Positions 1,511 through 58,695 of a stretch of 64,000 bases of DNA are shown here, piece after piece. The stretch comes from Octopus bimaculoides. Lineage: Eukaryota. The stretch spans positions 37,950,293-38,014,292 of the forward strand of contig NC_068984.1 in the NCBI RefSeq assembly GCF_001194135.2, in the 5' to 3' direction. A model generated the notes under the pieces. The model did no database searches. It saw nothing but the letters and a program-made list of their open reading frames with translations, and was not told where the DNA came from. The position numbers and the translations under genes were made by a program. Each line of letters begins with the position of its first letter. Position 1 is the stretch's first letter.

Positions 1511-1617
1511 ACGCCGATTTCCTAGCAGAAATACTAGCCCAAACCAAAATGCCACGTCTCAACCCAGTTCTGACTCTGGTTCGTCATCAAGCAATTTTCA
1601 GGGGAAACAAAGTTCTT
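1511..1617 (+). CDS. PIAS: PIAS exon immediately after SAP domain ([12 protein letters not shown]...GKQSS)
   Basis: Acceptor ttactttcag, donor gtaagt, phase 2 to 1. RRFP matches the PIAS LYRRRFP segment that follows SAP. The end phase fits the downstream exons. Confidence 0.82.
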
Positions 1618-18300: not shown

Positions 18301-21300
18301 GTTATAATAGTGTGAGATGGAAAATGGGTGAGGGGAGGGGAGTGATGTTAGGTAAGTTGCAGGAGTATGGGAAGAGAGTGAGCGTCAGATGGTGGTGGAG
18401 TGATCAGTATAGAGTATGGGTAGAGAGAAGAGTATTAATGAATGAAGGATGAAGAACAAGTGAAATGGTTTCAGATAAAGTAGCATCAAGGAAGAACTAA
18501 TTAGAGAGATGATGGGTGGTAGGATTAGGTAGGTCTTATCGACAATGGTATATCACAATAATCCTGGGCCTTTATAATCTCATGAAGGTCCTGAGATCAG
18601 CCTTCACCACTTTGTCCCATATCGTCCTGGGTTTCCCTCTTTTGGACCAGGTTTTTAGTCTTAGGATAACATTCTCCCTTACCTCACACCAATTACAAAG
18701 GCTCTGAAAAAGGATCATTAGTCTTCCTCTGACTAAACCATTAAAAGGAAGGTGCATTCATGTGTGTGTATGCATAGTCTTTAATATGATTTAGTTCAAG
18801 CAAAATGGTACTACCCATTTCCTCTACAGACCCTTCTGAGCTTGTAAGGTTACTGAAATTGATATTCAGGTTGAACTTCTAGAAGTCCATGTCTGTAAGG
18901 AAAATATTGGTCAAGTATGAACTCCCCTTAGTGATAAAAGTTTGAATAAAGTGCTTTGAATTGGGTTTATGGTGTGTGATATACTAAGGAGAATGAGTTG
19001 TGGTTTGAGTATGCTTGCTAGCTTAGATCAGACATATGGAATATTGTTGTTTGTTTGTGGGCATGTATTGACAAGTAGGAGTTTGTTTATCATGCAGATA
19101 GCCCTTTTTTTTTTTGTCATCTACAATGTATGTGTACCAGCTGCATTGTCACAGATATGTGATCAATGCTCCATTGTTTGGAGCATTTTTATCATGTAGA
19201 ATGTCAGCAACTATTAAGATATAAAATAGTTTTCGCTTCTCAAAAAAGGAGGTCTCTCCTTTAGGATATAGTTTTCGTTATGAAAAGGCATCCACGTTAG
19301 TTAGTGGATGTTTTAGTTTTGTTTTGTTGATGAATGAACAATATTTGTTTGACATGTTTGTTTGGCTGTCTTGATGCTGGTGAATAAATGTGATAGTGTG
19401 TGCAGACCTGTTATATAAAAGCTTATTCTCCTTTCTTCACATTTACTAATTTCTCCTTTTACACTACATTTTCTCTTTTCACACCCTTCTCTATTAGTTT
19501 ACCTAATGTAATGGTTATAGACGAGGTGTTTATGGTGAAGTATAAATTTAATCAGTATAAGGAAAACCTTATCTGACTTTGATTTATATGTGTTTGGAGA
19601 ACCATAGCAATAATGGTTCTTATTTTTCAATTTTCAGTAAATTCAGTTAAATCGGAATTGATCAGAAATCTGGCTGTACACCCATTAAACTTAAAGTCTT
19701 CAATAGGGATGCAAGGAAAAAGTATGTTTTTACTTTTTTACCCACTTTCTTTTATTTTCACTTTCTCTTTTATTTAACACCTGTGTAGATCTTTTATAAA
19801 AAAAAACAACACATTATTAAATATAATCAGATAGCAGGTTGTCACTCTTTCACAATCAGTTCTATTTTAACCAAATTTATAGTAATGAATGATTTAGATG
19901 CATTTTTATTTATGTGGTATATGCCAGGAGGTTATGAAGAAAATAAGAAAGTAAAAAATGAACAAGTAATGAAATGGAAAAAAAATTCTATCCCAATTAT
20001 TGGTTTTATTTAAGTTCTTTTTTCAGCTTTTTCAAAACTAAATAGATAGATAAGCAATAAAACATAGATGGAAAAAGTGGACAAAAACATGATGAAATGA
20101 ACACGTGTGTTGATGAAGATTATATTTTCAGTTGAGTAAAGAATCAGTACTAGAAAATTTTGAATTACAAATCCATGTCTAAGGAAAATATGGGCAGAGG
20201 ATGAACTTCTCTCTGGTGATAAAAGTTTAAATTATATGCTGCAGATTGCTTTGAGGTTAGGAATGTACTAGTGGTTGAAAACTTAAATGATATCAAATAA
20301 TGATCTCGATTATTGAGATTTTGTTAATTAGGCTCAAAAGNNNNNNNNNNACCAATAATGTAGCCTGAGTTAATTGTTTATAAGATGGGAGGTTTTGCTG
20401 TTTATTGAAAAGTTTAGATCAATATCTTGGATCTGTGTAAGGATCTGACATAATAGTTCTACAAGAGATACAATTCCTGTGACCAAACAGCAAGTTGTTG
20501 ATTGCTTTTCCATTCAATCCTTCATCTGGTACATAGGCTAGCTATTGAATGTTAAAAATTATTTGTGAATTTAAAATAGTAAACAGTGTGGTATGGGTGC
20601 TTCCTGCTACTGATAATTAATGCCTCATAATCAAGAATAAAATGTATTCAACTTATGAAAATGAATTATTAAATGAATTGCCAAAATCACTTAATTGAGG
20701 TACACTCATAGATAATTAAAACTTAACAGTATTATTTATAACATTTATCATCCCATCATTCTCTTTCTGTTAAATTTACTGTCTTAAAAATTAATAGTTA
20801 AATAAAAGATACATATTTTTAATGTATTTCAAGTACACATAATGTTTTGCATACATCACCACTGGGGTGACCTCAGTTTTTGTTGCTAATAACTATTGAG
20901 TTCAATTAGTAGTGGTGAGGAAATTTGAGGAGTGGGTGCATGATATCGCTTGCCTGGAGAATGTTCTTTAGACTTGCTCATTTACTGTGAAAGAGTGCTT
21001 TTATTTCAGTTATGCTATAAAGCTACTGTTTATTATTTCACACTATATAATTTTTCCCACTATTTCTGCACTGTTTAGATTTAGTTCACTGTCATTTAAA
21101 ACATATTACATCTATTTAAAAAAAGTAAAATTATATCCAAATTTATCCTCTTAAAATATTCAGAATATTTTGTTTCAGTATTCATGTTATGCTACCATTT
21201 AGATTATTTGATTGAAATAAAAATGAGCAAAGATTTATTTGATTGGTATTCCACCAGCCTGGAAAGGCACACACACAAATGCCTGAAAATAAGAGTTGTA

Positions 21301-24792: not shown

Positions 24793-27700
24793 GGGTCTTT
24801 TGACTATATTTAAATTTTATTTGAGGGGAAAAGACTAAATTCGTGTTGATTATAATAAATCTATTGAACAAAGCTACAAAATTGAGCGTGGACACAGTTT
24901 AGTAGCACAAGTATTAACGAAAGTAGGATCAGATGTAGCAGTATTAACGACAGCAGTAGGAGTGGTGGTAGTAGTAGTAAAAGCAACCGGAGTAGCGGTA
25001 GTAGTAGTATTTAACAAGGAAAGGAGTAGCACTATTAACAGCAGGAGTAGCGGTTGCAGCAGTTGTGGTGGTGGTAGTAAGTTTTATCTTACGAATACAA
25101 CTGTATACGGTCAAGTAAACAATTATTTTCTACTACTTGGCTCCATCACGACCACAGACCAATGAATTACCCCACTCACGGACAGGTTATGCTGGCACTG
25201 GACTTGCTACCAGAAACGCTAGGTTCTGACCTTTCTGATAACTTTGACTTCTTTTCCCCGCTGCTTTCCCTCAGAAACTAATGGATGCCACTTTCTCGGC
25301 CAACTTCGCCCATTGAGGAATGTATATTACGAATTGACGGAGTCGATGCATGCAAGTTTTAGACTAATTATAATTTACTGCTGATTGTATTTTATTTACC
25401 TGCGTATTTTGATAGAGGAAAACTTTTTTTAGTCACGTTAATTTTGGGCCTTATTTCCTATCCAAAATAATATTCTCTTGTCCTCCAGCTCGGCATACAG
25501 GAGTTGTGAGTTGTAAGGTATTTCATTGGGTGTTACCATCATGTTAGAGTAATGGCGCCTAAAAAATCAACAGTATCAAACGTTCTTCCGTTTCATGTAG
25601 TGGATAAAACGGCTTTATCACCGGGATATACGCATTGGGACCATCATGATATAATTTATACTAAAAGTGGTAAGTCATGAGGCATTTGCACCTCTCAGAA
25701 TTTGTACATTTGATAACTAATGAAGCTGCATTGTTGAGTAGTAGAACTTATCTGCTTAAAATATAATAAACACAGCACATATCTCTTTTTCTCCGGTGCT
25801 TTGCGATGAACATTTCTGTTCAGTTGTGACTATCAGTCTCTCACTGGAGAATATATCTTACAAATATATAATGGGGCCTTTATGTAGGCTGCTGGCTTTT
25901 GATTAACAACAACGCTGTTAATGATTATCTCGTCGTCCAGAAACGGCCTCTTATCTAAAAATCCCTTGGTTAGAATCAACACAAATATTGCTTTATTTCT
26001 TTTTTGTTCTTTATTTATTCCTTGTTGGGAAATAAAATAATGGTAGTGTTGGCTGACGTTAAAAGAAAAGCGAACCAGGCGACTACTAAGAGATTCTTTC
26101 CTGATCATATGAAATATTTCTTAACACTGCTATTTTCTATTATGCAAGCGACTGTTTTACTTTTCTGTTTATAACTTGTGAGCAAATTATATATACCATG
26201 GTGTCTCGTTGCTTGTTGGAAAAATACTTCGTTATTAGGGGAGTTGGAATGGTAGTTTGTTTTCTTATTTTTTTTTGCTCGAAAGATATTTCTTTCTAAT
26301 ATAGTTTTAAATGTAATTAATTTTGTCTAGTTTAACAGAATAAGAATCCAGTTGACTGGAAAGTTATGCAAATTATTTAATCCAGTCCTGATACACGAAT
26401 CGTTTCTCGTATAGAGTCAGCATTTTTAGATAATATATAATGTCATAACTGCTATAAAAACAAGATCAAGATTCATCGAAAATTAATATATTTCATTTGC
26501 CAGTATTAACTTTCTCGTCCACGACTTTATAAAGCAATGACGTATATTACTTTCGCAGACTGAATGTGTAGCTTTATGCTAAAAGAGATTTAAAATTAAT
26601 GTGAAAGTCAGTAAAACTTTTGTGTTCGTGTTAGAAAATAGTAATTTCGATCTGGCGATCTTAATTTAATGGCTATTCTTGAAAACAACAGCAGCCTTTT
26701 TTTTTTTATGCAGACTATCAAAATGTCTTTTCATATGTTTGATTATTTAAACTCTCTAGGTAGGTACTCCTTTAAACTTCTGGTCGATTACCCAAGTGTT
26801 GTATTTGCCGTCAATATTGTAGTTCCCTTTCTATCTTGTCTTTTTTTTTCTCACGCAAATAAATTTATCGCCTTTGCTTATGATTCTATTAAAGAGGAAA
26901 ACGACAATATTATTTCCGAAATAACCAAACTAACATTTGTTTTTTTATGATAAAGTTTCAAATCGATGTCTTGGTTTTGTATTACAATTGTCAAACATGG
27001 CCTATTAAAGAGAAAGTGTCATCCATCACTCAGCCCCACACTCGTTCACCTCTAAGATGTGGTTACTAATTATTTCAACTAACATCTCTCTTTCTCTCTC
27101 TCTCTCTCATAAAATTATTTTTAAAAAAATTCTAGTAGTTCTTGATCATAACAAGTGATTTGTTTTGCCTTGAATAACAATTTCAAAACTTCAGTTTTGT
27201 ATAGATTGTATTATTTTTCAAATATTTTAAGCATAGAATAGCCTTTTTTCCCCTTTTCTTATCGCTCCCTCCGATGAAAAAAAAAATGCTATTTTGTTTG
27301 ACAATGTATTATCAAATTTCTGTATTGTAACCGATTTTCAGTTTTCTTCTTTGGACTATCCAGGCTTATACTGCGAGATTGAAAAAGTGTACGAGTAGAA
27401 CGAGACTTATTATGATTATTATTATCACTACTACTGCTACAATTACATTTTCATCTTTAGATAAGAAGTCATTCAAATTATAAAAGCTAATAGTTTGGGA
27501 AAAACCAGGAAAAAAAAATTCACACAGAAACTTCCATATGCAATATGCAGAATAACAAACGACTTAGGCAAATAGTGCGAGATGTAGCCACCATTGTTTT
27601 GTAGGGAATTGACATATTGGTAGCAGTGGGTTATCGCGATAGAGTGCATAAAATAGTCACATTTGTAGGTCGATTATTTTCCCACCCTTTTTAATATTTG

Positions 27701-30700
27701 GATTTTTCTAGTTACTCAAATGTTAGTGGGAGAAGAAGAAAAAGCAGTTATGGCGAAAGTAATTTTGAATCTTTATTTGTGGCAAATTGCATTGGCTTCT
27801 TGAAAAAAGCCAACAATATCGGAGACATGTTGTGATATTTATACTTTCTCTCCAGCTGGGAACGAAAACTAGATTATGGTTAGTTTTTCAGTGAACTGTG
27901 TTCATAATACGTATAAGCTCTCGAAAACTAGTTTCGGTTTATATAGTTATTACTTCCGCTCAGCTTTTGGAAGGAGAAAATGTGACTGTTATGTCGTTCC
28001 CTGTATGTTGGACTAACCATTAATTAAATGCATCAGCTTGCATATGAAATGGATGGATATTGAAAGGGATTTCCGAATTGATAATTACTAAGTTCAGATC
28101 CCTTGTAATATTAACAACATAAACCTTTTCTAGTAATGCCGTAGAGCGCTGGCCAAAATGTTTTTTTTATATCTAGTTACGGCCGTTTATATTCTGAGTG
28201 GGGCCAATAAAATGAGTCAGGTAAAGATCGATGTAATCCACTGCATGACCACTCCCTGGCTTTGTGCCTATATTAGAAATCAAGACATTTGTATTTTAGT
28301 CCCTCAAAGTTTGATGCTCTTGTTAGAAGAATCACCAAGGCTGTTATATAAAAAGTACTTGGATCTGACAAAATTAGCATTGAGGGCGTTTTCTCTTTAT
28401 TTAGTAAATAATTCATGTGGCGCTGATTTAGATGTTGCATTTGTAAGAAAAATAGTGGGAATGCTATAAACCTAATGCCTTGTATACATACGTTCATTAA
28501 CTATCACTTCCGGCTCTTGTGCATTTATTTATGTATGTTAGCCTTTTTTTTAAAATACACTGAGAGCATGCCTGTCTAAAGGGATCGTATTCAAAGTGTA
28601 AATATTATTACATGGCTGACATAATGTACTGCACAATACGCTCTGCAAAGTCTCGATAAAATTGAAAAGTAATTGAAACACTTCAGCTACCTCCTCGTTG
28701 GAAATATAGTCATGAAAGAGTAAATAGAAGAGTTTGTACAAAAGTTTGTAGATATCTGGAGAGATATAGATATAACAGGTATCCTAGATTTACTCTTTAT
28801 GGAATTTAATCTTAGTTATCCTGAAAGACAAGACTCCTTTTTGCTGTTTGCTTTCCTAGAAAAAGTATATTCAATGAATTTACTTCAATTTCATTTCTTT
28901 TTGAAAAAGTAAATTGTTTCCCAATTAATTGTTTCTCATTTATTTATTCAGGTCCAATTGATTTTAGCAGTAAGCACAATCACTCAAGTCCTGTGAGTTC
29001 ATTACCAGTTCATCCAGATGTGAGGTTGAAACGGCTACCGTTTTATGACATTTTAGGAGAGCTTCTGAAACCAACTAGTTTGGGTATGTATGCTAAGAAA
29101 ATAAATTCCGTTTGAAATAGTGTATTTTGTTGCTAGCTAAGCAATATTAACGAAGAGTTATATCCCTTCAGATTTTTCAAAAAATTCAAATGTTTTGATT
29201 TTTACTTTGGTCATTCGATAAGTAGAAAATATTTCAGTATAAATATATAAGCTATGCCTTAATTCTGGATAATTCTTTTTTTAATTTGAAAACTCTGAAT
29301 TCAGGTATACTAATGTAATCTTTGCATACGAATTCTATTAACTTAAGTTTTTGTGGGATAAATTTTAACTATAAACAATTGATAACATCGCATGTCTGTA
29401 CCAGATGTTATTAAAAGAGAACTGTGCATAAGAAACGTGATAGATTTCGTTAAAAGGTAAAGTTGTGAAGTGTATACGAAGTTACTGATTAGAATTCATC
29501 ATTAATAGCAACTATTTTGAGTATCTTGTAACAGATGGCTCATGAGTTTTTTAATAAGCTTCGTGCTTTGTTTCATGTGAGATATATTTGACTTTAAAGT
29601 AAATCATTATTTGTTAAACATTATGATGAAGTCTAATTTGATATGTAATGATTTGTCTTTATTTTACATTGATTTAGTTTATACCTGAATATCTTCATAT
29701 TCTAATGAATCGCTGAAAAGATATGGACTGTTGTGCAAGAAAATTTTTACAGCTAAATATATAGGAAATCTGATAATGTCTAAATTTCACAAATTAGTTT
29801 TTAAACTCAGCTTGTGAAGACCTGTTGGGGAAAGCGAAATCGTGACAGCACCTGTGCCCAGCGTCGCTTTCTTGGCACTCATGCCGGTGGCACGTGTAAA
29901 GACATTCGAGCGAGATCGTTGCCAGTGCTGCTGGGTTGGCTCCTGTGCAGGTGGCACGTAAAATACACCATTTTGAGCGTGGCCATTGCCAGTACCGCCT
30001 GATTGGCCTTCTTGCCGGTGGCGTGTAAAAGCACCCACTACACTCTTGGAGTGGTTGGTGTTAGGAAGGGCATCCAGCTGTAGAAATTCTGCCAGATCAG
30101 ATTGGAGCCTGGTGTAGCCATCTGGTTCACCAGTCCTCAGTCAAATCGTCCAACTCATGCTAGCATGGAAAGCGGACATGAAATGATGATGAGTTTTTTT
30201 TTTCTCCGGAAATTTACTAAAATGAATACTGCATGTATATCATGAAAGTCTAATCCACAAAAACTGATAACACTTCAGCACAGTAGGCCTACCATTAAAT
30301 GAAATTAGTATATGTATTGAAATTAACTACAGGATGGTGACAAGGTGGTTGAAATTTATGAAAAAGGTTGTAAGTTTTGAATCAAGGGAAATGTATATCT
30401 GTAGGAGCAGGGCAACTGTAGATGATTGAAGAGAAACCAATTGAACAAAGAAAAAAAGTAATAACTGCAAGAAATTTTATGTACTTACCTAGATTTGTGC
30501 AAAATATTTCAATATTGTAAGTTTAAAAAGCTCCATGTAGAGTAAAATAGACATAAGAAATTCTGAGCATCAAATGTGAAAAATGATTATCAAAGAAGAC
30601 TCTTGGAGGGCAGTTAAGATTTTTAGAATTACTTATTGATTACTATCCCTGCTCCCCTTAACCATCCTATTATGAAATGAGAATGGTTCTTATTTTAAGC

Positions 30701-33700
30701 CTGACAGATTGAGAGAAACAGAATGTCTTTTGCAAATAGGTGATATTGTAATGTGTTTGAACATAATGGATATTTGCACTTGGAGGTTTAAAGTTGAAAT
30801 TTTAAATTGTCATCTTTTCATTTCTGTATTAACATTTTATTTGATGTATTTTGTTTTCCATTTGACTTTTGCAGTCCCTAAACCTACTGGTCGTTTTCAA
30901 GAAACATTCTTTATATTCCATCTCACTCCTCAACAGGCACAAGATATTGCTATGTCCAGGTAAATAATGTCTGTGTGTGTTCACTAGTTGACTATTAAAT
31001 CGTTAGAATCTAAAATATTATTGGTGGCTAATTAAGTTAATATAATTTTGCTAGTTTTCTTCTATATCCTTATGTTAATCAATTCCTTGTAAGTAAGGTT
31101 AGGTGAAAAATTGTGTGTGTGGGTGTGTGAGAGAGAGGAAAAGTGCAAGGTTGAGCGACCAGGGTGTTCAACACATCATCAAAAGATTGTGTGTTCAATT
31201 CCTGGGCCAGGTGACATGTGCTCTTGAGCAAAACACTTGATTTCATTTTACTCCAGTCCATTCCACTAAATGAAATAGCCATTATGTCTACCAGGTCCAC
31301 TGCAAATGAAATAGCTATCATATTCTCCCAGGTCATGGGTGAGCAGACCAAGAGAGCATCTGTCTACTCACAACTACACAGGCATGTAAAAGAAATAGCC
31401 AAAGTATGGTACATGCTTATTAGGTCAAATTTGCATGCAAGGAATTATGGTGTAATATGTCTAGTGTGCCATACAACAACTGAGGACAAAGAGAAACTAA
31501 TCGGTAAAATAAGAAGTTCATCTGTATATCTATATCAAAGAACAAGCCATTCAACAAAACACTTCAGTTTCAGTGCAACCATTGTCACAAGTACAAGCTA
31601 AGATCAGACAGCCCTATCCATACTGGCTACATTTCCTACAGTGATGTAGCTCTGGCAGGTTCTAATGCGTGCCAATGATCCCCTTAGATATAGTTGTCTC
31701 ATATTTTGAAATGAGATATGTTGGGGATCACATCATCACATAAGAAGTTCTGACAACTACTTTTAGGTCATGAAGGCTTTATGAGAAGGAACAGATCCTG
31801 TTGAAATCCTGAGGAAAACTCCCATTACTAAGTTTGAATAACATTTCCATAGCTCTGAGGTTATTTCAGAAGTGAGGGTGCACAGTATGGCTGTCTTTGC
31901 TCACACCTTCCAGTGATAAGGTGAATAATATGATATGGTCAGCAGATTGGTGCTTATGCAGGGCTGCCCATCACTTTTGTTTTTTTAGGGCTGCTCAAAG
32001 TTCTCATAGGGAAAGCACCAGCATGGTGAGTTTATTAAGATGCTTCTGTCAGTTAACTAAATGCCTCAGCTGGATTTTGTTTTAGTTCTGTCGATCATGA
32101 ACTGCACTCTTATAAACTTGTACTTGATGGTCTCTTGTACTATGTATATTCGTGTGTGTGTATGTGTGTAACAATAATGAGCTAAGGGAAATAACTGTGG
32201 ATTGTGGCAGTGTTTGAACAAAGACAAATCTAACAAGATAACTACTTGACTTATTGAAATTATCACTACTTCCAGAAAGGCTTGGTGACAGTCTCAAGAA
32301 TCGAGAATTTTCCAAAATTAACATCCCATTAAAGAAAAGATATATTTTGACTTTTTGATAGCTGTGGAAATGTTTTCACCTCAATACGCAGCTGTTGCTC
32401 AACATTGTCTCCAGCAGACCGAAATATATTTAGCTGTACAAGAAATTGTAGAGTATATTTATGGTCTAAGTAATATGAATATATGTATAGTGGGTGGGTG
32501 TGTTCCTGTTCCATGCTGACATGGATTGGGCTTTGACTGGATCCCATGTGCCCAAGGCCTGCATCAAGCTCCAATGTTTGCTTTGGCATGGATTTTACAG
32601 CTGGATACCCTTTACACTGTTTTTTTCTTTTTTTGCTTGCTCCATTGACAGTGCTACAAGCCCTGGAAGGTTGGGGATCAGTTTCATGCAAGACGATGAG
32701 GTTGCAATGAGAGAAAGAGAGCTGTGCAAAGCAAGTTCCTCCAGTGATATCTCTGCATGGCTATTAATATCTTACAGGGGAAAAAATGTCAAGTTCATTT
32801 TGCAACTACATGTCCCATTGCACTCACTTTCTGCAAGTGTCCTTGGAGCCTGTGTGTGTATGAATGTGAAGATACACACACGTGTGCACACATACATATC
32901 TTCTATATTAGATACTTATGTAATACCAAACTTCAATACTGCATGGATTGAGATTTCTGTTGACAGGACACTAGTATATAGTTTTAGTTATTTAGGTTAA
33001 GTGTCTTAATTTGGGTAGTTACAGATCTGGTGTTGCTTTGGTACATTGGTTAATACGGCTGGTTTAAAGCAGATGTAGTGTTTGAACCCCATGAGCAATG
33101 TTACATTTTTATCTTGTGTATATCTTGGTCTGCCTTGACATTGCATGCTAATGTAAACAAAATATCATCATCATACAAGCAGTGTCAATTGTTTGCAGTT
33201 TTCTGTGAAGACAGGCGTGATTTTGTATTGTTTGTGTTCAAAGAACTAGGTAAATTGTCATGCTTGGAAAAAAGGTGTGGATTGGTGAGAACAAGAGCAT
33301 TTGACCATAGTAAATCTGCCTTAGCAAATTTTGTCTGACCCATGCAAATAATGAAATTTGAATATTGAAGCAATGTTAATAATAGCTATAGCTCCTGTTG
33401 CCTACACTAACTTTATATTCAGAGTAATAAAACATCATTTAACTTGTAATAACTCTAACATTATCCAAAATGAATGAAATTTTGTTAGCTCTCCTTTAGC
33501 TAATATCAGATAAGGCAGGAGTTTGATTAAATTTTCAATGACTGATTGATCTGTGTTTAACCACAGTACAAAGCTTTTGTCAACTCTGTACTTTTCCATC
33601 AGGATCATAGCCTTCTTTATCATGAATTGCCCATGTTCTGTAGGATTGTGAATCCTAAATTGATGTAGATGGGCAATAGACCCATTTCAAATGTAGCCAT

Positions 33701-36700
33701 TTAAACTACCATTTTATCGCCAAACAGCCCTCCATACTAACTCATCTGTGTTTTGTTGCACCATTCATATATTTGCCTACGATTAGAAAATTGGCAGAAT
33801 TTGGTTTTGTTAAACCCATATATTGATAACAAAAACTTATTTTTTCATTCTGGTTAAATGTTTCAGTGTTATTAGCTTTTGAAATCATTGGCTTCTTTCT
33901 GGGAACTCTCCAGTCATATCTAAAATCTTTATTGTTTTTATGTAATATGTTGACAAATCCATAAAATTTGTTAACTCTCTAATAGTTGTACATCAATAAT
34001 TAATAACTTCCACCACTCTGTCCTTTCTAAAACTACACACAAGATAAAAATTGGCCATTGATTAATCTGTCAATGATTTTTATGTTGCCTTATGAAAATT
34101 AAAGTTACAACTAGTCCAAAAATACAATTATATGCATGTACCTGCAAAGAAGAGAAATCATACCTAATTAGAATAACAAAATCAGTGAGCAGCTAAGAGC
34201 TGTTTATTAGGTCAGTGGATGTACTTTTTACATCTGTTTAACATCCGCTTTTACATGGCCTAGATGAGATTAGGGCTTTGAGGGTGCGATTTTATTGTTG
34301 GGTGCCTCACCTGTTGCCAATCTTCATTTGCTTTTCCTGTAAGGGATTGGTTTTATATTCTGCTACTCATTGCCAATGCAGAGCGACCAGTCTGTAATGT
34401 CAGCAAGGAATGACAATATCAGTTTCACTGCACTTGTTCTGCAAAATGTCAACATTCATATATTTGTATACATATATAGACATATGTATGATAGGAAGCT
34501 TGCTTCCCAACCACATGGTTTCAGGTTGAATACCACAGTATGACACCTTGGGCAAGTGTCTTCTACTATACCCTCAAGCTGACCAAAGCCTTGTGAGTGA
34601 ATTTGGTAGTTGGAAACTGAAAGAAGTCTGTTGTATATATAATTTCATGGACTTGCAGTACATTGTGTCCTTGAACAAGTTACTTCTTGTGAAATTTCTC
34701 TAGTCTACTCAATTGAAATTGAGTGCTGGTGCAGCTGCTTGTCTCTCCATGTATCTTATTTTTGATGTTCTGCATCAGTAAAGAGAACGCTAAAAGGGTT
34801 TGTGTCTGTTCATGGCAATTTGCAAGTACTTCTTGGCTACTCAGACCTGCTTGCAAGTGACAGCTATGTTTTTCATATATGTGTATATGCATGCATTTGT
34901 GTGTGTACATATGTTTTGCCACATGCAGGTATTAAAATAATACTATACGTTATTTTTGTGTATACATTTATGTATGTGCCTGCATGTGTAAATATGTGGA
35001 TATATGTATGTACATGCATATATAAATGTATATCCCCCACTGCTATCCCACCTCAGCCTATATATCACTTTCCTTCCATACATTCTTGCATCTTCTTATC
35101 CTACCACCCTTCCCATTCTTCTGTCTCTTCTATTCACCTTGTACATTAAGGGCTAACCCTGACACATTAACTCTCTCTCTCTAGATCCATCCTAATTAAT
35201 CCCACCATTGTGAAGAAACCATATATCTCTTCTACAGCAAGAGGCATGTTCTTACACTGATGTGCATCACATACACACACGTGCATGCAAATAGTTTTAA
35301 TTTGTCTTCCAAATCTACTCATTTGGCTTTGGTTTGCTCAGGGCTATTATAGAAAGCATTTAATTGTCTGTACAGTAGGGCTGCATAGTTTCCTCTCATA
35401 GCAGGGATACATTTTACCTATTCTTAAAACCAATGTGTAGATGTATATGTTATATACATCTTCATGCATGTAATATGTGTATAAGGCAGCGAGCTAGCAG
35501 AAACATTAGCATGCCGGACGAGATGCTTAGCAGTATTTCGCCTGTCTTTACGTTCTGAGTTCAAATTCCTCTGAGGTTGAATATGCCTTTCATCTTTTCC
35601 AGGTCAATAAATTAAGTACCAGTTGCATACTGGGGTTGATCTCATTGCTTCGGGAACGTTTTTCGGTGCTGGACACTGTTTTCCGGTGCATGTCTTCTTG
35701 TCCCAGGCATGTTCTTGCGGCCTCAGGCTCATTCTTTCAGTGCCAGGCATGTTCCTACTCCAATTTGTTTCTAGTGGTTTTCTTACAATTATCTTAAACT
35801 GTTAAGCAGTTTATCTATTGAAGCTATGTTTCTACACATATAGTAGTGAAATTCTTGTTGAAATTCTCATTTAATTATGAATAGCTTGTTTTGGGAAGGT
35901 TTGATAGTAACATAATATTAAATATGGTATCAAGAATGATATTCCCCCTTTTTCAGGTGATTAAAAAAATTTTTTTAATTCATTAGAAATGTTTAAATTA
36001 TTATCGTTATCAGCGTCGCCTTACTGCCACTTGTGCCGGTGGCGCATGAAAAAAAACATTCGAGCGAGGTCATTGCCAGTGCCGCTGGACTGGCTCCTAT
36101 GCAGGTGGCACATAAAAAACCGCCATTTGAGCGTGGCCGTTGCCAGTACTGCCTGACTGCCCCTTGTGCTGGTGCCACATAAAAGCACCCACTACACTCT
36201 TGGAGTGGTTCGCGTTAGGAAGGGCATCCAGCTGTAGAAACTCTGTCAGGTCAGATTGGAGCCTGGTGCAGCCATCCAGTTTGCCAGTCCTCAGTCAAGT
36301 CATCCAACCCATGTTAGCATGGAAAGCAGACGTTAAACGATGATGATTATCCACATATCTAGGGGCAGCTCTCCTCCCACCTGCATCCACATTTTGCACT
36401 AAACCAAAGATAAATGTCTACTATAACAAGGGTTTTTTTCCTTTTGAACTTGATTATCTGCAGCCTTCACTAAAACACTAGACTCATTGGGCTTTTTTTA
36501 TTTTTTTTAAATCCAGCCGTCTTATCTTATTTGTCTACATTTTCCCCTACCAGTGATTTTTTACACTTAAATATGTATTTACAAATCTGTACATATATTA
36601 ACATGGAAAGCAACCATAAAACTGTGGAGGTAATGTTTGTGTTTATGTATAGATATATGCATCTCTGATACAGATTACATATGTGTGTTATATATATATA

Positions 36701-39700
36701 TAATGTGCATATTGAACAGTAAAGTATATGAATTTTTTTTAAATCTCAATTATTTTCCATTTTTTCCAGAGATTTTAGACCTGGTGCTAAATGTGAATAC
36801 ACAACACAAGTGCAGTTGAGGTAAGTAATGATTTTAAGGTCTTTGTTGTTCCATGTCCAAAAATATTTCAATTTTGCTTGGTTATTTATCACCTCAAATA
36901 TTCAGTGTGTTTATATTTTGAGTGTTAAGTTTAGTAATGAGTGACACACTTATATTTTTATAGATTTTGCCTTTTGGAAACAAGCTGCGAACAAGATGAC
37001 AACTTCCCTCCAAGTATATGTGTGAGAGTGAATGGGAAACTCGCGACATTGCCAGTAAGTGAACAATATTTATTGTGGAATTTTTTATAAAGTATTTAGA
37101 TTTTGCATGTCAATGACAAATGTTTTTTTCTTGATTTTGTCTTTTATAGTGTATATTTTTTAATGGCTTTTATTTATTGGGTAATTGTAACAAAAAATTA
37201 TTCCATTTTCAGAATCCAATACCAACAACTAAACCTGGTGTTGAGCCCAAACGTCCAGGACGTCCAGTTGACATCACAGCTTTATGCCGGTTGTCACCAA
37301 CAGTGCCCAATCATGTTGACGTGTCATGGGCTTCAGAGTTTGGAAGGGTTTGTATTGTTGTTTATTAATAATTTTCATTTTGTAGAAAGTATTCTTGTTG
37401 CATTTATTTTGTTTCACTTCAAATTTTGAACCATAACTATGTGGTATTTTAACATGCTGATATTGAAATGTTCGGTGTCATTCCTTTTCTGTCCCAGGGT
37501 TACTGTGTTGCAGTTTACTTGGTGAAAAAGCTTACCTCTGACATTCTACTACAAAGATTAAAACAGTTTGGTAACCGCCATCCAGATCATTCCAGAGCTT
37601 TGAGTGAGTATATTTTTACTTTTGTAAATATAATTTTTAGTTAATAAATTTTTTATATTTTAAAATTAAAAGTTAAAAGTTGGAGTAACTTGAACTACAT
37701 TTACAGAAATCTAATACTAATTTGGAGATTATTATGTACAATGATATTGTTAGTGGAAACTTTCTGTAAGAGCTAATAATATAATTTTAGCATAGTGGTA
37801 CTATCAATGTGACGTATGAATAAATTCAACTAAAATGTTTTATCATAATTATTTCTTAAACTGTAGTTAAAGAAAAATTACAACATGATCCAGACAGTGA
37901 AATTGCAACTACTAGCCTTAGAGTATCATTGATGTGTCCAGTGAGTATTCTATATATATATATATATATATATTTTCTTTTTAATTTTCCTTGTTTATAT
38001 GATTATCTTTAGATGGTTTTTCAATTGGTTCATACCCTATGGTTAACTTTCACGGCTACTGCTAAATGTTTTTTTTAAAGTTTCCCCATTTAATGAAGAT
38101 TTTCTTTAAAGAATACATTGTGCATAAAACTATTAATTGATCTATCATTTAATAAAATTTGCTACATCATTATTTTAGCATCTACTTTTCTGTGCTCACA
38201 TGGGTCAGACAAAATTCATTAATGCCATCAGATTTTCAATGGCTTGGGTACTTTCTGTCAGCAGCCCTCAATTGTTTCCAAGTAAGAGGATAGTTCTCCA
38301 TGGACAGACACTGCATGATGGTCATGTTTGTTAACAACTATCATGCAATGTTAATGTAATCAACAAATTTGTTCTGTTTGCTTTTAAGGAATTTGTCATT
38401 AAAAGAGTTTATCAGATTTGTGTATTTATTTTACAGCTTGGAAAAATGCGTCTTCAGATTCCCTGTCGTTGCAGTACATGTACACATTTACAGTGTTTTG
38501 ATGCTTTCACATTTCTTATGATGAATGAGAAAAAACCTACATGGATCTGCCCTGTCTGTGATAAATCTGCAGCATTTGATAAACTTATTATTGATGGGTA
38601 AATATATTAACAGTTTTTATATAATTCAAAGTAATTTGAAGCTAATAAATATAGTTTGTGTAAAATTTTCTTACTTTCAATCTCCCTAGATTGTTTTAGA
38701 TTTGAAATAATCACAATGCTTGAGAGGTGAGCCTACATTGTTCCAATATGAGTTGAGGTTAGTGTGTTTTTCTCAGTTATGAGTTAGATGGTCAATATTA
38801 TTTTAGTGATCATTTCTCTCTTTCAGATTATTTGTGGAAATTCTTCAACAGTCTGCTGGTTGTACAGAGATTCAATTTGGTGAAGATGGTTCTTGGAGTC
38901 CTTTGAAGGCTGTAAAAGAAACATTACTTATCAGCAGCCCAGTTATTAAAAGCTCATCAATACCAGGTAAAGTGAAAACGATTTGCCTTCAGTTTTGGTG
39001 GGTGGGTGGGTGGTAATTTTGACTGGATTCTTTGCTAACCACTATCCTGTTCTCAAGAGAAAGTAAAAGGCTTGTCTTTTGGTTTTGTGTGTGAATAGAC
39101 AAGTCTTCACAGGTAAAGTTATTCAGTAGCCAAAGAATAAAATTGTTTACTGGGATTCTTTTTTCCTACCAACCTGTTAATCAAGAATTCAGATCATAAG
39201 GCACATAAACTCCTATATAGTCAACAGTCTCAGAGCAAGTTCAATCAATTCTATCCAGATATAAAACTTGGTCACTTGAGCTGAATTATTTATTTCTTGG
39301 AAGTGTTTAACAACTGATGTCTGAGATGAATATTGCATGTTCATCTCATTGTAGAGGTATGTGAATATCTCTGGGTATATTTTCTTAAAGCCATTATTAT
39401 TTTTCTCCAAATCCAGCAGCTACAGCATTCATTTATTAGTATTTGTGGATTGGTAGTACTGATGTGTAGAGAACTGAAGATGTTTCCAGATAACTTATTG
39501 ATTGGTTTCAGCCCCCACTGCATGGTATCTTGGGCAAATGTCTTCTATCATAGCTTGGATGGGGGTTATAAATAGATGGAAACTGAAATAAGCCCATCAT
39601 GTGGGGTTGTTTGTGTTCCTTTGTTTCAATATCATATGGTGTTGTAAATCAGAGACATTGTCACTAGAAGAGTGTTATTCATTTCTAGTATTCTGTTAAA

Positions 39701-42700
39701 ACATGTCTGGCCAAGGAGAACTTTTACCTTGCTTGGAAACAGGTGAGGGGTGGCTATAGGAAGGGCATCTGGCCATAGAAACTAATGCAACCATGAAAAA
39801 AGGACATTAAAATGATGGCATATTGGAAATGTGTTTGTTGCATTGACTAAAAGAAATAGAATAACATCCTACCTAAAGATCATTTTAATGACTATTTTTA
39901 GAATATAGGTATTTAACTTCTTTAGAATAGAAGGCTGAGAACGGCCCCAATGCCTTTTATACAAAATCAAAAGTATGTTCTTGAAATCTTATTTTTTTAA
40001 ATTCAATTTTCTGAAGTTATTGCTTCCAAAACATATTTATATTTTATTTTAAAAGGATCACCCGAGAAAAAAGCAAGTCCACAGCAAGATGTGATTGATT
40101 TGACTATGGATTCCTCATCTGACGAGGAAGATCTCACACAGCATGTTACTCCATCACGAACTCCAAGTACATCACAAACCAGTAATTCTTCAGGGTGTGT
40201 GAGTCCATATGTTATTCCTATTGGCACGCCATCTCCTCCCTCACACTTCTGAATGCTGTCTGTGACCACACTGTACAGACTTCAACATTGCCTTGAACTG
40301 TTTAAGCTGCATGTTGTTTCGACTTGATGGCTGGACTTTGTATATACATATAGATATTCCATTTAAGCACAGAAACTTGCAATTTCTCTTTTTTGCAAAA
40401 CTTAGTTTAATAGAATGATTTTTAAATTCAAGATACTTATCTTGTTAGATGTCTACATACTTGCAATTCTGGCTTATCATCACTTGGTTATTCCATACAA
40501 CATGTATCTACAATTATTTTAAATTACATTACCCTCTCCTCACATTTGTATAAATTGTTTAAAAGAAAAAAGAAAAAAAGTTTATATAGACCAAATGGAC
40601 AAAAAAATTACTTCCCTCTATATATAACTTATTAGATCTCTCTACCTGCACTCTTCCATTACTTTGGTCATTTTCAGTTAGTTACATTGTACGCATATAT
40701 GTTGCAGAGAGAATGTATGTGTTTAAAGATATATACACTCGCATACATATTTTTGTCATTTCCCGCCCCCCACCCCCTTCACATTCATTTAATTGTAATA
40801 TATTTTGACATTTGGTAAAAATTCTCCCTCCATCATTGTCCTCATCTTTTTTGTCTCTTCATCATTCCATTTTGATTTGTTTTATGGTATCAGATTTGTT
40901 TATATATCATACATCTGAGAACAAATGTAAGTTGGTTTTATTGCATTTTTGTTACTCTTGTTCAACAATTCTTGAATAACAGCAGTGAGGTCCTGATTGC
41001 CTCAAATGCGTATATTTACAGTCTCTGTAGTCTTGAAGTGGACTGGTTTGGGTAAACAGATTTTCAGATCTTTAAATCAACTAAGTATAATTAAAATATT
41101 GATGAATTTGTAAGCTATTATATTCAAATGTTTCAATTTTTTGAAATATTAAGTTGATTAGTCACCTTTATTTTACTTGCGCGTTCTCTCTTTCTCTCCT
41201 TTATTTAAATGGTTCATTTCAATAGGTTTCTCTGAATTGATATTTTTTATAACAAGCATGAAAAAAAATTTTTCGAGTGTCTTATGAAGAATGCAATTTA
41301 TAAAAATAAATCATTACAGTGAATTAAGAGGACTCTATAAGATAAATTATAAAAAAATCGTAATCCTTCAATTAAATTTTCAACAGGTGTTTAACTCACA
41401 ATCTGTTTACTAAGGATAATATTGTTATATAGTTTTGCTGTTTACTGTCAGGTTGTTTTAAACTGGGTGTTTTTTCTTCTTTTGTTACCTTGTAGTTTTT
41501 GCTTTCGTTACATATTTGTCATTTTCTCCAAATGTTACTGTTTTCTAGTTTAACCCTTTAGTGTTCAGATTACTCTGTTAAATATGCTTTTTCACTCAAA
41601 TTGTTTGGAATTAATCTTCTAGTTTTGAGGTTTCAATGATGTGATTTTTTTTATTTTTAGAATGTCAATGTAGGTTATGTGAGAGGCTAGATATGGCCAG
41701 TTTAAATGTAAAACATTTGGAATATTTGGGCTGGATATGGCCAGTTTAAACACTAAAAGGTTAATCTATTTTGTAGATAATATTTAAATTTTATAATAGG
41801 GATTTAATTTAAATGTAATTCTAAATGCTTCTGATGTAGTTATTAAAAGTTGCAGTCTCAACTAATTTCTTCGTATATTTAACAAAATCTTATTAATTTC
41901 CTCATCTATAGTATGGTATATCTTAGAACGTGTGTACCTCATATTTTTTCATTAAACTCCCCCTTCCATCCTTTTTTTTTATTTTGCATAAGATTTTTAA
42001 TGTTAGGGATAAATCTTTTTTTCCACTTCTTTCTCTCCCTCACCCATATCTTTTTGACACATTCTTTTTCATTTTCCCCAAAATACACAAGTTAAAACTA
42101 CTTAACATGAATTTCATTTAGCAACTTAGTAAATAATTCTGCTAAATAAGTTGTTTCTGTAACTTTTTTTAACATGTGAATGCTACTAATTGAGTTTATG
42201 TATTTAGAATATTTTTTGAGTAATTTAGAGTAAATGTCTTTCGTAAGCATTTTGATCATGGAGTGCCTTTATATTAAGATTTGTAATATTTTCTTAATAG
42301 TTTTTAAAAGTATCTGATTTTCCAATAAATAACATCTGACTTATTTAGTAATTCTGTAGTTTTCTTAATTTACTTCTTAGTTCAGTTGTAAGTAGTGTAA
42401 TTATACTTTTGGTAAAATGACAAAAAAAAATGTATTTAAGAAATATGTGAAACTAAATCAGGCTAATAAGAATAATATTTAAATGAATTATTAAATAGAA
42501 ATAGTTTTCACTGTTTCCTCCCAGTCTGCTCAGGATTATTTATATTCCTTTACTCATTACCTGTGATAATTGAATTTATCATTGGTTTCATGATGTAGAG
42601 GTGAAATATTGCTACTGTTATTCCAGAAATTGTTAAACTGATGTTTAATTGTACACAAGACAAAAAGGAAACCCTTTTTGTGCCATTGTACTGGAAACTG

Positions 42701-45121: not shown

Positions 45122-48100
45122 TCTCTCTCTTTCTTCTCAGCCTTCTGGTTGAAACATTACCATTGTACTTGTGTTGTTTAGTACGAGGTTGACCCTGATT
45201 GAGTTTTGATAGCTCTCTCTTTTTTAATCTTTCTTTTCTGAAAGTGGACTACATTATCTAATGTGCCCTTCCCTTTTGAGACAGTAAGGTGTTATTTGAG
45301 TGAGATTTAGCAGGTCGAGTAATCGCATAGAAGATCCCTCATTCACTCTTGTGGGTTCATTGTATATGCTGGTGTTTGATAGAGCAAGTCTATGACGCTT
45401 GTCTATTCTTCCTGCAATATTTATTTAGAATCTTACTCGGCAGTTTATTCAGCTATTTGTATATGTTGTATGCAGATGTCTTTTGTACACTTGTAACTTA
45501 TTAGCTAGCTAAAGATCTATTGAACTTTAGGCTGCTGCAGTGTTTGGTACCTCTCCAGGGCTGTGTTGCCATCAATTTGACACATCTACATCCTGTGTTG
45601 TAGTGATCAAAATCAAGTTTGATGCTAGTTCTAATAATTTCCATGTCTGTTATATAATTGTCTGCTTCAGAGAATAGCCTCTTAGCTATTCCTGGTTGTT
45701 AAATAGGCCATAACATCATTGTTGAGACATGTGTGTGTGTATTTATGCAGACATACATTATATATAATGCAAAATGTTTGAAACAGTTTTGCTTGTCCCA
45801 TAATTATTTTTTTAAATTTACATTTCAGAAAAATTTCATGTTCATCATATTTATTCTTGACATCCCAGATGCTAGGCCTAATCACTAAAAATTGACAAAG
45901 TATTTTCTACTATATCACTTGAAATATCCATTAAAATGCTTTAAGATCATCTTTTATGTTGTTATTGTTCTATTTTTGAACATTGGTGCAGTGTAAATTT
46001 TTTGGTCATTGAGATTCTAGTTTTGATTCTTAAGAATGCTTTACATATTGACTCTGGAAGTACATAATAACTTTTTTTTTTTCCTTTTACTCTGTAAATC
46101 CAGAAATTTATTGTAAAAAATTTACTTTTTTGATAAGAAAAGATTATCTTAATCTTCAAGGAGAATTATAAAGACATGAATTGTTTTATGAAAACGTTTT
46201 AGATTTTTCTTAAATTGATTTGATTCTTTAACTGGTTGTAGTTAAAGATTATAAATATACTTAAGAATGAGACAAAACATTTTCAAATTGATGTAGATAC
46301 TTTTTTGTTTTTCTTCAGATGGATTAGCAAAACCTACTAACCACTCAGATTCAATGCAATCAGCTATTGAAAACCCATCTTTAATGAATCATTAGATTAA
46401 AGTTAAACATATGAAATGGGAGTAAAACTTTTGATCCTGTTAAAATATTTTTACTGATAATTGTTCGAATGCTTTGGATGATGTTTAGAACATATTTAAA
46501 ACTATCGCAAGTAAATTTACAAAATAATTGAAGTGTTTTGAAGTTACTATTTTTACTATGTGTTACTACTAATAATTTCTCACATTTAATACTAAAGACT
46601 GCTTGTAAAAATATATATGAAGGTAAGTTACGAATGGAACATGAAATCCTTTTTCTTTTTGTTCTAGTACAGATGTTCTTTCATTATTACTATTATTATT
46701 AAGTACTCATACATACACATGCACACATACCTATATTTATATGTGGTTAAGTTCTATAATTTTTTTCTATCTGATTTGTCCATACTTAGATTGCTATAAA
46801 GAACTGCAACATGTAATTTATTTTATAAGATTACTTATTTCTGTTGATATTTATTAGGAATATGGTCGTGTTCTTGTGAAGATATTTTCCTCAGCCATTG
46901 AGATTCTTTCTCCACCATGTATTGTTTATAAGCTTATTGCAATAGGCATCCTTAAATAGTCTTATTACAAGGTCCTGTTACTGGTTCTTCTATATTTTGC
47001 CCATTATAGAGAATGTTCTCATTGGAATGAACTAAAATTTTTTTGCTTAAGCTATTCCTTAAACTTATTAGGAATTGTATTTTTAAAAATTCATTAGTAA
47101 TTGTGTGATTTGATAGATATAAAAGCTAAGACAGAAGTTCTACAATTGGTGACAGGAATTTTGGACCCCCAAGATCCTTAGTATTTGTTTGTTCTCTAGT
47201 TTCCTTACTATAAAATTACTAACAAAATCAATCCAGTTTTAGATCAGCATTTTTAAGATTTTGTGTGATAGCTGTATAGCCAGATAATTAATTTCTTTAT
47301 TTTTATAATAAACCATTTTATTAGTGTTCCATTTTATATGATATGGTTAAACATGACAATCCTGAGTAAATGGAAGAATAACAAGGTGGGAATCATTGGG
47401 AAGCTAATTTTCCATTGGGATTAAATTTTAAAAATATGTAAGGATGAAAAAAAAAAACCTTAAGAAATTAAGTAATTTTTTTATTATTGCTAATGTGTTT
47501 GTTTTGTCTCTTTCTTTATTTCTTACAGATCATCAATTGCGACTTCAGTTAATTCATCTCCTGTGTATTCCAACAATGTATATCTTCAGCCGCCTTCCCT
47601 TCCTGTTATCACCTCCAACAGTATTGCAGCAGTATTTGGCTCGCGGTCATCTCCTGTGTTGAAATCTGCACACTCATTGTACATATCACCTCCAAACTTT
47701 GCTGAACTGTCAGCTAATGATATTTCTGAAAATTTTACAAAACTACCAGTTTTCCCTGGAGCCAATTCCAGTTCAGCAGCAGCGGCAGCAGCAGCAGCTT
47801 CAACACCAAACCCAAGGGGTAATGAGATTCACTTTATATCTATCTGAATTCCTCTCAAAATGGCAGAGAGATTTGAAACTACAGTTGCTGGATGGCAGTA
47901 GCTCTGTGCATATAGGTATAAAACTAGTATACTATTTGGACAATAAAAAAAAAATCATTTTAACGACTCCAAATTTGGGTTGGCATCATCAAATATTCAG
48001 AGAGGACATTAACAGTCCTTGATACATCTTCATTAGTTTTTTTTTTTTTTTTTTCTCCTTTCTTGTTACAATCATTTTGTCTGTCTTTGAGAGTTAAGGA

Positions 48101-57909: not shown

Positions 57910-58695
57910 NNNNNNNNNNNNNNNNNNNNNNNNNNNNNNNNNNNNNNNNNNNNNNNNNNNNNNNNNNNNNNNNNNNNNNNNNNNNNNNNNNNNNNNNNNN
58001 NNNNNNNNNNNNNNNNNNNNNNNNNNNNNNNNNNNNNNNNNNNNNNNNNNNNNNNNNNNNNNNNNNNNNNNNNNNNNNNNNNNNNNNNNNNNNNNNNNNN
58101 NNNNNNNNNNNNNNNNNNNNNNNNNNNNNNNNNNNNNNNNNNNNNNNNNNNNNNNNNNNNNNNNNNNNNNNNNNNNNNNNNNNNNNNNNNNNNNNNNNNN
58201 NNNNNNNNNNNNNNNNNNNNNNNNNNNNNNNNNNNNNNNNNNNNNNNNNNNNNNNNNNNNNNNNNNNNNNNNNNNNNNNNNNNNNNNNNNNNNNNNNNNN
58301 NNNNNNNNNNNNNNNNNNNNNNNNNNNNNNNNNNNNNNNNNNNNNNNNNNNNNNNNNNNNNNNNNNNNNNNNNNNNNNNNNNNNNNNNNNNNNNNNNNNN
58401 NNNNNNNNNNNNNNNNNNNNNNNNNNNNNNNNNNNNNNNNNNNNNNNNNNNNNNNNNNNNNNNNNNNNNNNNNNNNNNNNNNNNNNNNNNNNNNNNNNNN
58501 NNNNNNNNNNNNNNNNNNNNNNNNNNNNNNNNNNNNNNNNNNNNNNNNNNNNNNNNNNNNNNNNNNNNNNNNNNNNNNNNNNNNNNNNNNNNNNNNNNNN
58601 NNNNNNNNNNNNNNNNNNNNNNNNNNNNNNNNNNNNNNNNNNNNNNNNNNNNNNNNNNNNNNNNNNNNNNNNNNNNNNNNNNNNNNNNNNNNNNN
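57910..58695. other. Assembly gap (largest of eight: 98-478, 3956-3965, 6267-6825, 20341-20350, 48373-about 49003, 57910-58695, 59105-59114, 60032-60600)
   Basis: N runs, several bordered by (TA)n or poly-T. Confidence 0.99.

What the first reader, a model, noticed from the sequence alone, without database searches (positions are those of the whole stretch)
25552..25669. Alternative ATG exon predicts a SAP-less PIAS isoform
Seen: ATG, 39 codons and a consensus G|GTAAGT donor in the correct phase for exon 28952. This gives a 614-aa ORF (MAPKK...[11 protein letters not shown]...PDVISLD) that keeps PINIT, SP-RING and both SIMs. Established: the PIAS SAP domain mediates AT-rich DNA/matrix binding and contains the LxxLL motif. 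Inference: a promoter switch yields a catalytically competent SUMO ligase uncoupled from SAP-dependent targeting. I do not know whether this isoform has been annotated.
Basis: partly seen in the sequence, partly recalled or inferred. Interest (0 to 1): 0.8.

Follow-up and report, generated by a model that had tools for sequence, protein, structure and literature searches.

The report
Already-annotated SAP-less octopus PIAS isoform
The exon is real in the sequence and gives exactly the predicted 614-residue SUMO ligase without its DNA-binding SAP domain, but this isoform is already in public annotations of three Octopus species, so it is a correct re-discovery and not a new finding.

Summary
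There is an ATG at 25552, 39 open codons and a G|GTAAGT donor after 25669, in phase with the acceptor at 28952. Splicing the window's exons from this start gives a 614-aa protein. It is identical, residue for residue, to RefSeq XP_014783370.1 / UniProt A0A0L8I9P7, [quoted passage not shown].

The same 39-residue N-terminus, 39/39 identical, is annotated in O. sinensis (isoform X5) and in two isoforms that are probably from O. vulgaris.

Pfam finds a complete PINIT domain and SP-RING and no SAP.

The finding missed a second SAP-less first exon 330 bp upstream (25162-25222, MNYPTHGQ...). It is also annotated, and it is also found in more distant cephalopods, probably decapodiforms. The MAPKK exon was found only in Octopus.

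Three things remain unshown: where the transcript starts (own promoter, extension of the upstream exon, or an internal exon), whether the ATG is used, and what the protein does.

Novelty is already known as an annotation, with function unstudied. Interest is low.

The parts
25552..25669 (+). The 5' end of the exon (UTR) is unknown.
   Evidence: The spliced translation equals P0128 (XP_014783370.1, 614 aa).
25670..25675 (+). Donor site GTAAGT of exon 1c (phase 1).
25541..25552 (+). Three-codon upstream ORF (ATG TTA GAG TAA) whose stop overlaps the main start (TAATG). It matters only if the transcript starts upstream of 25541.
25162..25222 (+). Coding part of a second SAP-less alternative first exon '1b' ([20 protein letters not shown] + G), donor CTAG|GTTCTG. 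Sequence similar to the 5'UTR of a related species' transcript begins near 25101.
   Evidence: The spliced translation equals P0133 (XP_014783384.1, 595 aa).
1511..1617 (+). Canonical SAP-PINIT linker exon ([10 protein letters not shown]...GKQSS), phase-1 donor. The SAP exons lie upstream of the window.
19638..19721 (+). 84-nt cassette exon ([28 protein letters not shown]), phase 1 in and out.
   Evidence: Present in X1/X2 models, in Argonauta and in the P0004-cluster transcripts.
28952..29083 (+). Shared acceptor exon (PIDFSSK...LKPTSL) where PINIT begins. It receives donors 1617, 19721, 25222 and 25669, all in phase 1.
30875..30959 (+). PINIT exon.
36770..36820 (+). PINIT exon.
36964..37054 (+). 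PINIT exon.
37213..37347 (+). PINIT exon.
37498..37603 (+). Exon between PINIT and SP-RING.
37867..37940 (+). Exon leading into SP-RING.
38437..38597 (+). SP-RING (zf-MIZ) exon.
38827..38966 (+). Exon after SP-RING.
40056..40194 (+). SIM1 exon ([16 protein letters not shown]). Read-through of its donor gives an alternative end, [18 protein letters not shown], with stop at 40250-40252.
47529..47818 (+). Ser-rich tail exon. Read-through of its donor gives an alternative end, GNEIHFISI, with stop at 47845-47847.
51605..51654 (+). Small tail exon ([16 protein letters not shown]).
53420..53692 (+). Last coding exon, ending ...QPDVISLD (C-terminal SIM-like motif) + stop.

Best explanation
Window 25552-25669 is the coding part of a real, already annotated alternative 5' exon (called 1c here) of the single PIAS-type SUMO E3 ligase gene of Octopus bimaculoides. 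It lies in the 27-kb intron between the SAP-PINIT linker exon (1511-1617) and the first PINIT exon (28952). It is spliced to 28952 in phase 1. It replaces the SAP domain and linker (about 125-170 residues) with a 39-residue peptide that has no detectable relatives. The product is isoform X5 (614 aa). It keeps the whole PINIT / SP-RING core, the central SIM with its acidic tract, and the C-terminal VISLD motif. By analogy with other PIAS/Siz proteins, it should still bind UBC9 and stimulate SUMO transfer. It should lose SAP-dependent chromatin/matrix tethering, the LxxLL contacts and the linker's basic stretch, so its location and substrate choice should differ. Shown: the sequence features, exact identity to the annotated protein, the domain content, and the same N-terminus annotated in O. 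sinensis and (probably) O. vulgaris. Inferred: a separate transcription start just upstream, use of this ATG, ligase activity and changed targeting. This exon is one of two neighbouring SAP-less first exons. The other, 1b at 25162-25222, is the more widely conserved.
For: The spliced model equals P0128 = XP_014783370.1 / UniRef100_A0A0L8I9P7, 614 aa. The identical 39-aa N-terminus occurs in O. sinensis X5 (P0127) and in CAI9720737.1 and CAI9720741.1 (P0136, P0122), which differ in their 3' ends. The O. vulgaris annotation paper says alternative forms were added only by PASA updates from Iso-Seq and RNA-seq assemblies (PMC10700109). With two MAPKK isoforms at one locus, at least one should therefore rest on a transcript. 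The O. bimaculoides and O. vulgaris/sinensis lineages split about 34 Mya. Pfam finds PINIT at 63-214 (full model), zf-MIZ at 259-307 and no SAP; isoform X1 has SAP at 10-42. The crystallised PIAS2 and PIAS3 cores (4FO9, 4MVT) align from residue 47-53, just after the junction. The start context is gtaATGg, and the 175 nt before 25541 contain no ATG. This is the only strong donor in the intron with an in-phase ATG ORF of at least 39 codons. In amphioxus, the N-terminal 115 residues with SAP keep PIAS in the nucleus (PMC5719053).
Against: The exact-sequence look-ups for the MAPKK isoforms found no assembled transcript. The annotated start codon is a pipeline's choice of ORF, not a measured N-terminus. 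Annotations are not fully independent, because protein models of one species are used as evidence in another. The 39/39 identity is weak proof of constraint: the whole protein differs between O. bimaculoides and O. sinensis at only 5 residues and 2 indels, all in the tail. No protein with this peptide was found outside Octopus. Candidate acceptors at 25275 and 25489 and seven upstream ATGs allow non-promoter origins.
Confidence: 0.7

Rival explanations
1. The junction is real, but the exon is not a separate first exon. Transcripts would start at the exon-1b promoter (or further upstream). They would either run through the weak 1b donor (CTAG|GTTCTG) to the strong donor at 25669, or splice into an acceptor at 25275 or 25489. 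The MAPKK ORF would then be only the longest ORF picked by annotation software. It would sit behind several upstream AUGs and short ORFs, so little or no MAPKK protein would be made, and the transcript would be regulatory or a target of nonsense-mediated decay.
For: Seven ATGs lie between 25162 and 25551, including the 39-codon MNYPT read-through ORF. Two acceptor-like sites have pyrimidine tracts as good as the gene's real acceptors: 25275 with 18/20 and 25489 with 15/20. The 1b donor is far from consensus, whereas 25669 is perfect. By my reading, entry from any phase-1 exon at 25489 runs into a TAG at about 25545-25547.
Against: The 175 nt directly upstream of the start region are free of ATG, and the start context is good. 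Three annotation efforts chose this CDS. The peptide is unchanged across about 34 My.
Confidence: 0.2
2. The exon is a chance ORF next to a chance consensus donor. It would have been first called by gene prediction in O. bimaculoides and then carried over to the other species through protein-homology evidence, with no real transcript behind it.
For: In shuffled intron sequence, a GTRAGT donor with an in-phase ATG ORF of at least 39 codons arises in 18% of trials. The O. vulgaris pipeline aligned the O. bimaculoides UniProt proteome, which contains this 614-aa entry. No transcript contig with this product was found.
Against: Two different MAPKK isoforms are annotated at the (probable) O. vulgaris locus, and extra isoforms there come only from transcript assemblies. 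ATG, frame and donor must all be intact in three genomes for the models to exist. The strict G|GTAAGT case arises in only 1.9% of shuffles.
Confidence: 0.07

Closest known systems
RefSeq XP_014783370.1 / UniProt A0A0L8I9P7, 'E3 SUMO-protein ligase PIAS2 isoform X5 [Octopus bimaculoides]', with its counterpart O. sinensis X5 (XP_029634643.1) and CAI9720737.1 / CAI9720741.1
   Same: Identical 614-aa sequence to the window's spliced model. The other species share the same 39-residue N-terminus.
   Different: Nothing differs; this is the same object. These are computed models with no published functional study found.
SAP-less isoform from exon 1b: O. bimaculoides X7 (XP_014783384.1), O. sinensis X6, CAE1267559/61 and Logan transcripts such as SRR27666059_22315
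   Same: Same gene, same acceptor exon 28952, same phase, same loss of SAP and linker. The exon lies only 330 bp upstream.
   Different: It has a different 20-residue leader and a weak donor. It is backed by an assembled spliced transcript, and it is also found in a more distant cephalopod cluster with 88% protein identity. That cluster is probably decapodiform; this is my recollection of the accession series, as the species is not shown in the outputs. Exon 1c was found only in Octopus.
Engineered or natural N-terminal truncations of PIAS/Siz ligases: amphioxus bPIAS 116-600 constructs, crystallised human PIAS2/PIAS3 cores, yeast Siz1 167-465, and mouse Miz1 (an N-terminally short PIASx-beta form; the last two from memory)
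   Same: All have PINIT + SP-RING without SAP. In amphioxus, the SAP-bearing N-terminus decides nuclear retention (PMC5719053). The solved cores start where this isoform's shared part starts.
   Different: Most of those are laboratory constructs. Here the truncation is encoded in the genome through an alternative 5' exon that adds its own 39 residues.
Classical PIAS isoform diversity (PIAS2 alpha/beta, PIAS4 lacking exon 6)
   Same: One PIAS gene gives several proteins through alternative exons (PMC9316396; the reference list of PMC5719053).
   Different: The described vertebrate variants differ at the C-terminus or inside the protein, not by loss of SAP. This octopus gene also has alternative C-termini ([27 protein letters not shown]).

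Membership tests
Siz/PIAS SP-RING SUMO E3 ligases | SP-RING (zf-MIZ) zinc finger | tested here: met
   PF02891 at residues 259-307, 71.8 bits against a cut-off of 33.5.
Siz/PIAS SP-RING SUMO E3 ligases | PINIT domain upstream of the SP-RING | tested here: met
   PF14324 at residues 63-214, covering model positions 2-142 of 142, 106.7 bits. 4FO9 and 4MVT align over residues 47-392.
Siz/PIAS SP-RING SUMO E3 ligases | N-terminal SAP domain with LxxLL | tested here: not met
   No PF02037 hit in P0128. Isoform X1 of the same gene has SAP at 10-42. The gene is a family member; this isoform lacks the domain because of its exon choice.
Siz/PIAS SP-RING SUMO E3 ligases | Central SIM followed by an acidic/Ser tract, and a C-terminal SIM as in PIAS1-3 | tested here: met
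   By inspection, [16 protein letters not shown] and the terminal PDVISLD are present. The positions match the description in PMC8998487. Binding was not tested.
Siz/PIAS SP-RING SUMO E3 ligases | UBC9-dependent stimulation of SUMO conjugation | not testable with these tools
   Needs an in vitro SUMOylation assay.
Alternative-promoter (alternative first exon) isoform | Spliced transcript joining 25669 to 28952 | tested here: inconclusive
   Implied by RefSeq and PASA-updated models. No transcript contig was retrieved.
Alternative-promoter (alternative first exon) isoform | Own transcription start upstream of the exon, independent of the canonical and 1b starts | not testable with these tools
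   Only sequence hints exist: an ATG-free 175 nt on one side, against candidate acceptors at 25275 and 25489 on the other.
Alternative-promoter (alternative first exon) isoform | ATG, frame and donor kept in close relatives | tested here: met
   39/39 identical residues plus the shared junction Gly in the O. sinensis and CAI97207xx models. This is protein level only; no DNA was available.
Alternative-promoter (alternative first exon) isoform | Conservation beyond the genus (other coleoids) | tested here: inconclusive
   No protein with this peptide was found among cluster representatives. SAP-less forms in the more distant cluster all use exon 1b. Clustering can hide isoforms, and no genomes could be aligned.

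The most novel reading that the evidence does not exclude
Coleoid cephalopods keep an internal promoter region in the large SAP-PINIT intron of their single PIAS gene. The two leaders would give different regulation or location, for example non-chromatin SUMOylation in the large nervous system. Some gastropod models also replace SAP at the same exon boundary, so this could be an old molluscan way of separating the ligase core from chromatin tethering.
Probability: 0.3. Interest if true: 0.4.

Novelty: already known. Interest (0 to 1): 0.15.

Why it matters
If the protein is made, it would be a natural separation-of-function form of a SUMO E3 ligase. It would have the full catalytic core and SUMO-binding motifs but no SAP tether. 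That would be useful for asking what SAP contributes in vivo in an animal with a single PIAS gene. As it stands, the isoform is a database entry in three species that nobody has studied.

Tried and rejected
- **Genomic DNA of relatives.** I tried to fetch O. sinensis DNA for a nucleotide-level comparison. The gene spans 148.6 kb and no DNA was returned. Look-ups of X3, X4 and two CAI models were not on record.
- **Transcript contigs.** I looked for assembled transcripts encoding the MAPKK isoforms of three species. I also tried the 42-aa and 39-aa read-through ORFs of exons 1c and 1b, in the hope of hitting unspliced genomic contigs. Nothing was found.
- **Other isoform combinations.** I built four further window-encoded isoforms (1b or 1c with the GNEIHFISI or CVSP ends) and looked them up exactly. 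None is in the collection.
- **Relatives of the 39/40-aa peptide.** No candidate shared enough 5-residue words with it. A full HMMER scan of 1.84 billion representatives gave only two marginal hits (E about 3-5e-4) to repetitive, unrelated proteins. I reject these as chance.
- **Repeat or RNA origin.** The region 25000-25800 is unique within the window, so the exon does not come from a repeat present elsewhere in the window. Rfam found nothing in the window.
- **Literature.** Searches for described SAP-less PIAS isoforms returned nothing specific.
- **My first gene model.** It had 589 aa because it missed the 50-nt exon 51605-51654. This was corrected.

Full report
**The observation.** An ATG lies at 25552 in a good context (gtaATGg). 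It is followed by 39 sense codons, a G at 25669 and GTAAGT at 25670-25675. The nearest in-frame stop upstream is TGA at 25507-25509. The exon at 28952 starts behind a normal acceptor (tttattcag|GT), and the split codon G+GT gives Gly, followed by PIDFSSK.

I rebuilt the gene from the window. My first model had 589 residues because I missed a 50-nt exon.

**More than chance?** In the 27.3-kb intron that holds the exon, it is the only GTRAG-type donor with an in-phase ATG ORF of 39 codons or more. Dinucleotide-preserving shuffles produce at least one such site in 1.9% of trials for the exact G|GTAAGT form, 18% for GTRAGT and 38% for GTRAG. The sequence alone is therefore suggestive, not decisive.

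**Context.** The window is part of the single PIAS-type SUMO ligase gene of an octopus, on the + strand. It is 100% identical to Octopus bimaculoides proteins.

- The SAP exons are not in the window. The first PIAS exon here is the linker exon 1511-1617 ([10 protein letters not shown]...KQSS).
- An optional 84-nt cassette exon lies at 19638-19721.
- The O. sinensis gene spans 148.6 kb.
- All four exons that can splice to 28952 end in phase 1: 1617, 19721, 25222 and 25669.

**Already annotated.** The 90%-identity cluster around the best hit contains P0128. This is XP_014783370.1, [quoted passage not shown], also UniRef100_A0A0L8I9P7. It has 614 aa and starts [47 protein letters not shown]. The window's spliced model is identical to it.

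The same N-terminus, 39 of 39 residues, heads three other models:

- O. sinensis isoform X5 (XP_029634643.1, 613 aa).
- CAI9720737.1 (613 aa).
- CAI9720741.1 (515 aa, ending GNEIHFISI).

The species of the CAI entries is not printed in the outputs. From the accession series and the chromosome-scale contig I take them to be the O. vulgaris annotation. The paper for that annotation says alternative forms were added by PASA updates from Iso-Seq and RNA-seq assemblies (PMC10700109). Two different MAPKK isoforms at one locus therefore imply transcript evidence for at least one.

**Strength of the conservation.** It is weaker than it looks. Between O. bimaculoides and O. sinensis the whole protein differs at five residues and two indels, all between residues 423 and 535. 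Zero changes in 39 residues is therefore not by itself proof of coding constraint. I could not obtain DNA of another species.

The peptide has no relatives elsewhere. No cluster representative shares enough 5-residue words with it. A full scan of 1.84 billion representatives gave two marginal hits to repetitive proteins, which I discount.

**A second SAP-less exon that the finding missed.** Protein P0004 comes from a spliced 3.3-kb contig of a public sequencing run. It starts [21 protein letters not shown] and then continues with PIDFSSK. The alignment extends into the 5'UTR from about 25101.

With this first exon, the window model equals O. bimaculoides isoform X7 (XP_014783384.1, 595 aa) exactly. 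O. sinensis X6 and the CAE1267559/61 models also carry it. Members of the P0004 cluster are 88% identical to the octopus protein. I think they are decapodiform, but that is my recollection of the accessions. All SAP-less members of that cluster use exon 1b, and none uses MAPKK.

The SAP-less design is therefore shared widely among cephalopods through exon 1b. Exon 1c is so far seen only in Octopus.

**What is not settled.** The transcription start is unknown.

- If transcripts began at the 1b start and ran on to the strong donor at 25669, the MAPKK ATG would follow seven other ATGs, including a 39-codon ORF.
- Two acceptor-like sites, at 25275 and 25489, have pyrimidine tracts as good as the real acceptors of this gene. 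The exon could therefore be internal. By my reading, entry at 25489 from any phase-1 exon hits a TAG at about 25545-25547, so inclusion would be non-productive apart from re-initiation.
- In favour of an own start: the 175 nt before 25541 contain no ATG. The only nearby upstream ORF is three codons long, and its stop overlaps the start (TAATG).

**Likely working.** Pfam finds the complete PINIT domain (63-214) and SP-RING (259-307) and no SAP. Isoform X1 has SAP at 10-42. The crystallised PIAS2 and PIAS3 cores align from residue 47-53, just after the junction. The central VIDLT motif with its acidic/Ser tract and the terminal VISLD are retained, in the positions given for SIM1 and SIM2 of PIAS1-3 (PMC8998487).

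From memory, SAP-free Siz1 and PIAS fragments are active E3s in vitro. In amphioxus, the SAP-bearing N-terminal 115 residues keep PIAS in the nucleus (PMC5719053).

The best-supported mechanism is therefore a ligase-competent protein without SAP-mediated tethering and LxxLL contacts, and hence with altered localisation and substrate range. All of this is inference.

**Verdict.** The isoform is already annotated in three species by at least two pipelines, so novelty is "already known" and interest is low. The residual interest is the pair of neighbouring SAP-less first exons and their different depth of conservation.

Noticed in passing
It is annotated as O. bimaculoides X7 and O. sinensis X6. 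It is also present in a spliced transcript contig of a more distant cephalopod, including part of the 5'UTR.
   Followed up: yes
window 25275 and 25489: Two acceptor-like sites with strong pyrimidine tracts (18/20 and 15/20) lie between exon 1b and the MAPKK ATG. The MAPKK exon could therefore also be used as an internal exon, which would be non-productive.
   Followed up: partly
window 19638-19721: An 84-nt cassette exon ([28 protein letters not shown]) sits in the SAP-PINIT linker. It is present in the Octopus X1/X2 models, in Argonauta hians, and almost unchanged in transcripts of the more distant cluster.
   Followed up: partly
window 47819-47847 and 40195-40252: Two alternative C-termini arise by read-through of donors. 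GNEIHFISI* removes the C-terminal VISLD motif and is matched by GNEIQFISI in all transcripts of the more distant cluster. [18 protein letters not shown] ends just after SIM1.
   Followed up: partly
window 15438-15538, 29898-30192, 36052-36346, 60636-60821: An interspersed repeat family (70-95% identity between copies) occurs in introns and downstream. It contains a recurring ORF fragment (...[13 protein letters not shown]...), and further fragments of that ORF turn up at other sites on both strands (e.g. near 62500 and 63400).
   Followed up: no
P0006 (UniRef100_A0A0L8IB28) versus window 63297-63470: This O. bimaculoides UniProt model replaces SAP with a 96-residue N-terminus. That N-terminus resembles only a short stretch at 63297-63470 (32-50% identity, E 0.04-0.24), where repeat-like ORF fragments also lie. 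It is probably a mis-predicted start.
   Followed up: partly
P0058 (Arion), P0069 (Physella), P0059 (Bulinus): Some gastropod PIAS models also lack SAP and join an unrelated N-terminus at or next to the same boundary (...G[LM]DYS). Some of these leaders look repetitive and may be prediction artefacts.
   Followed up: no
window 24880-25080: A GTA/GTG/GCA-rich trinucleotide tract lies directly upstream of exon 1b. The related transcript contig starts with a (TG)n run at the corresponding place.
   Followed up: no
window 98-478, 6267-6825, 48373-49003, 57910-58695, 60032-60600: These are assembly gaps (runs of N), often flanked by (TA)n-like simple repeats. None touches a PIAS exon.
   Followed up: yes
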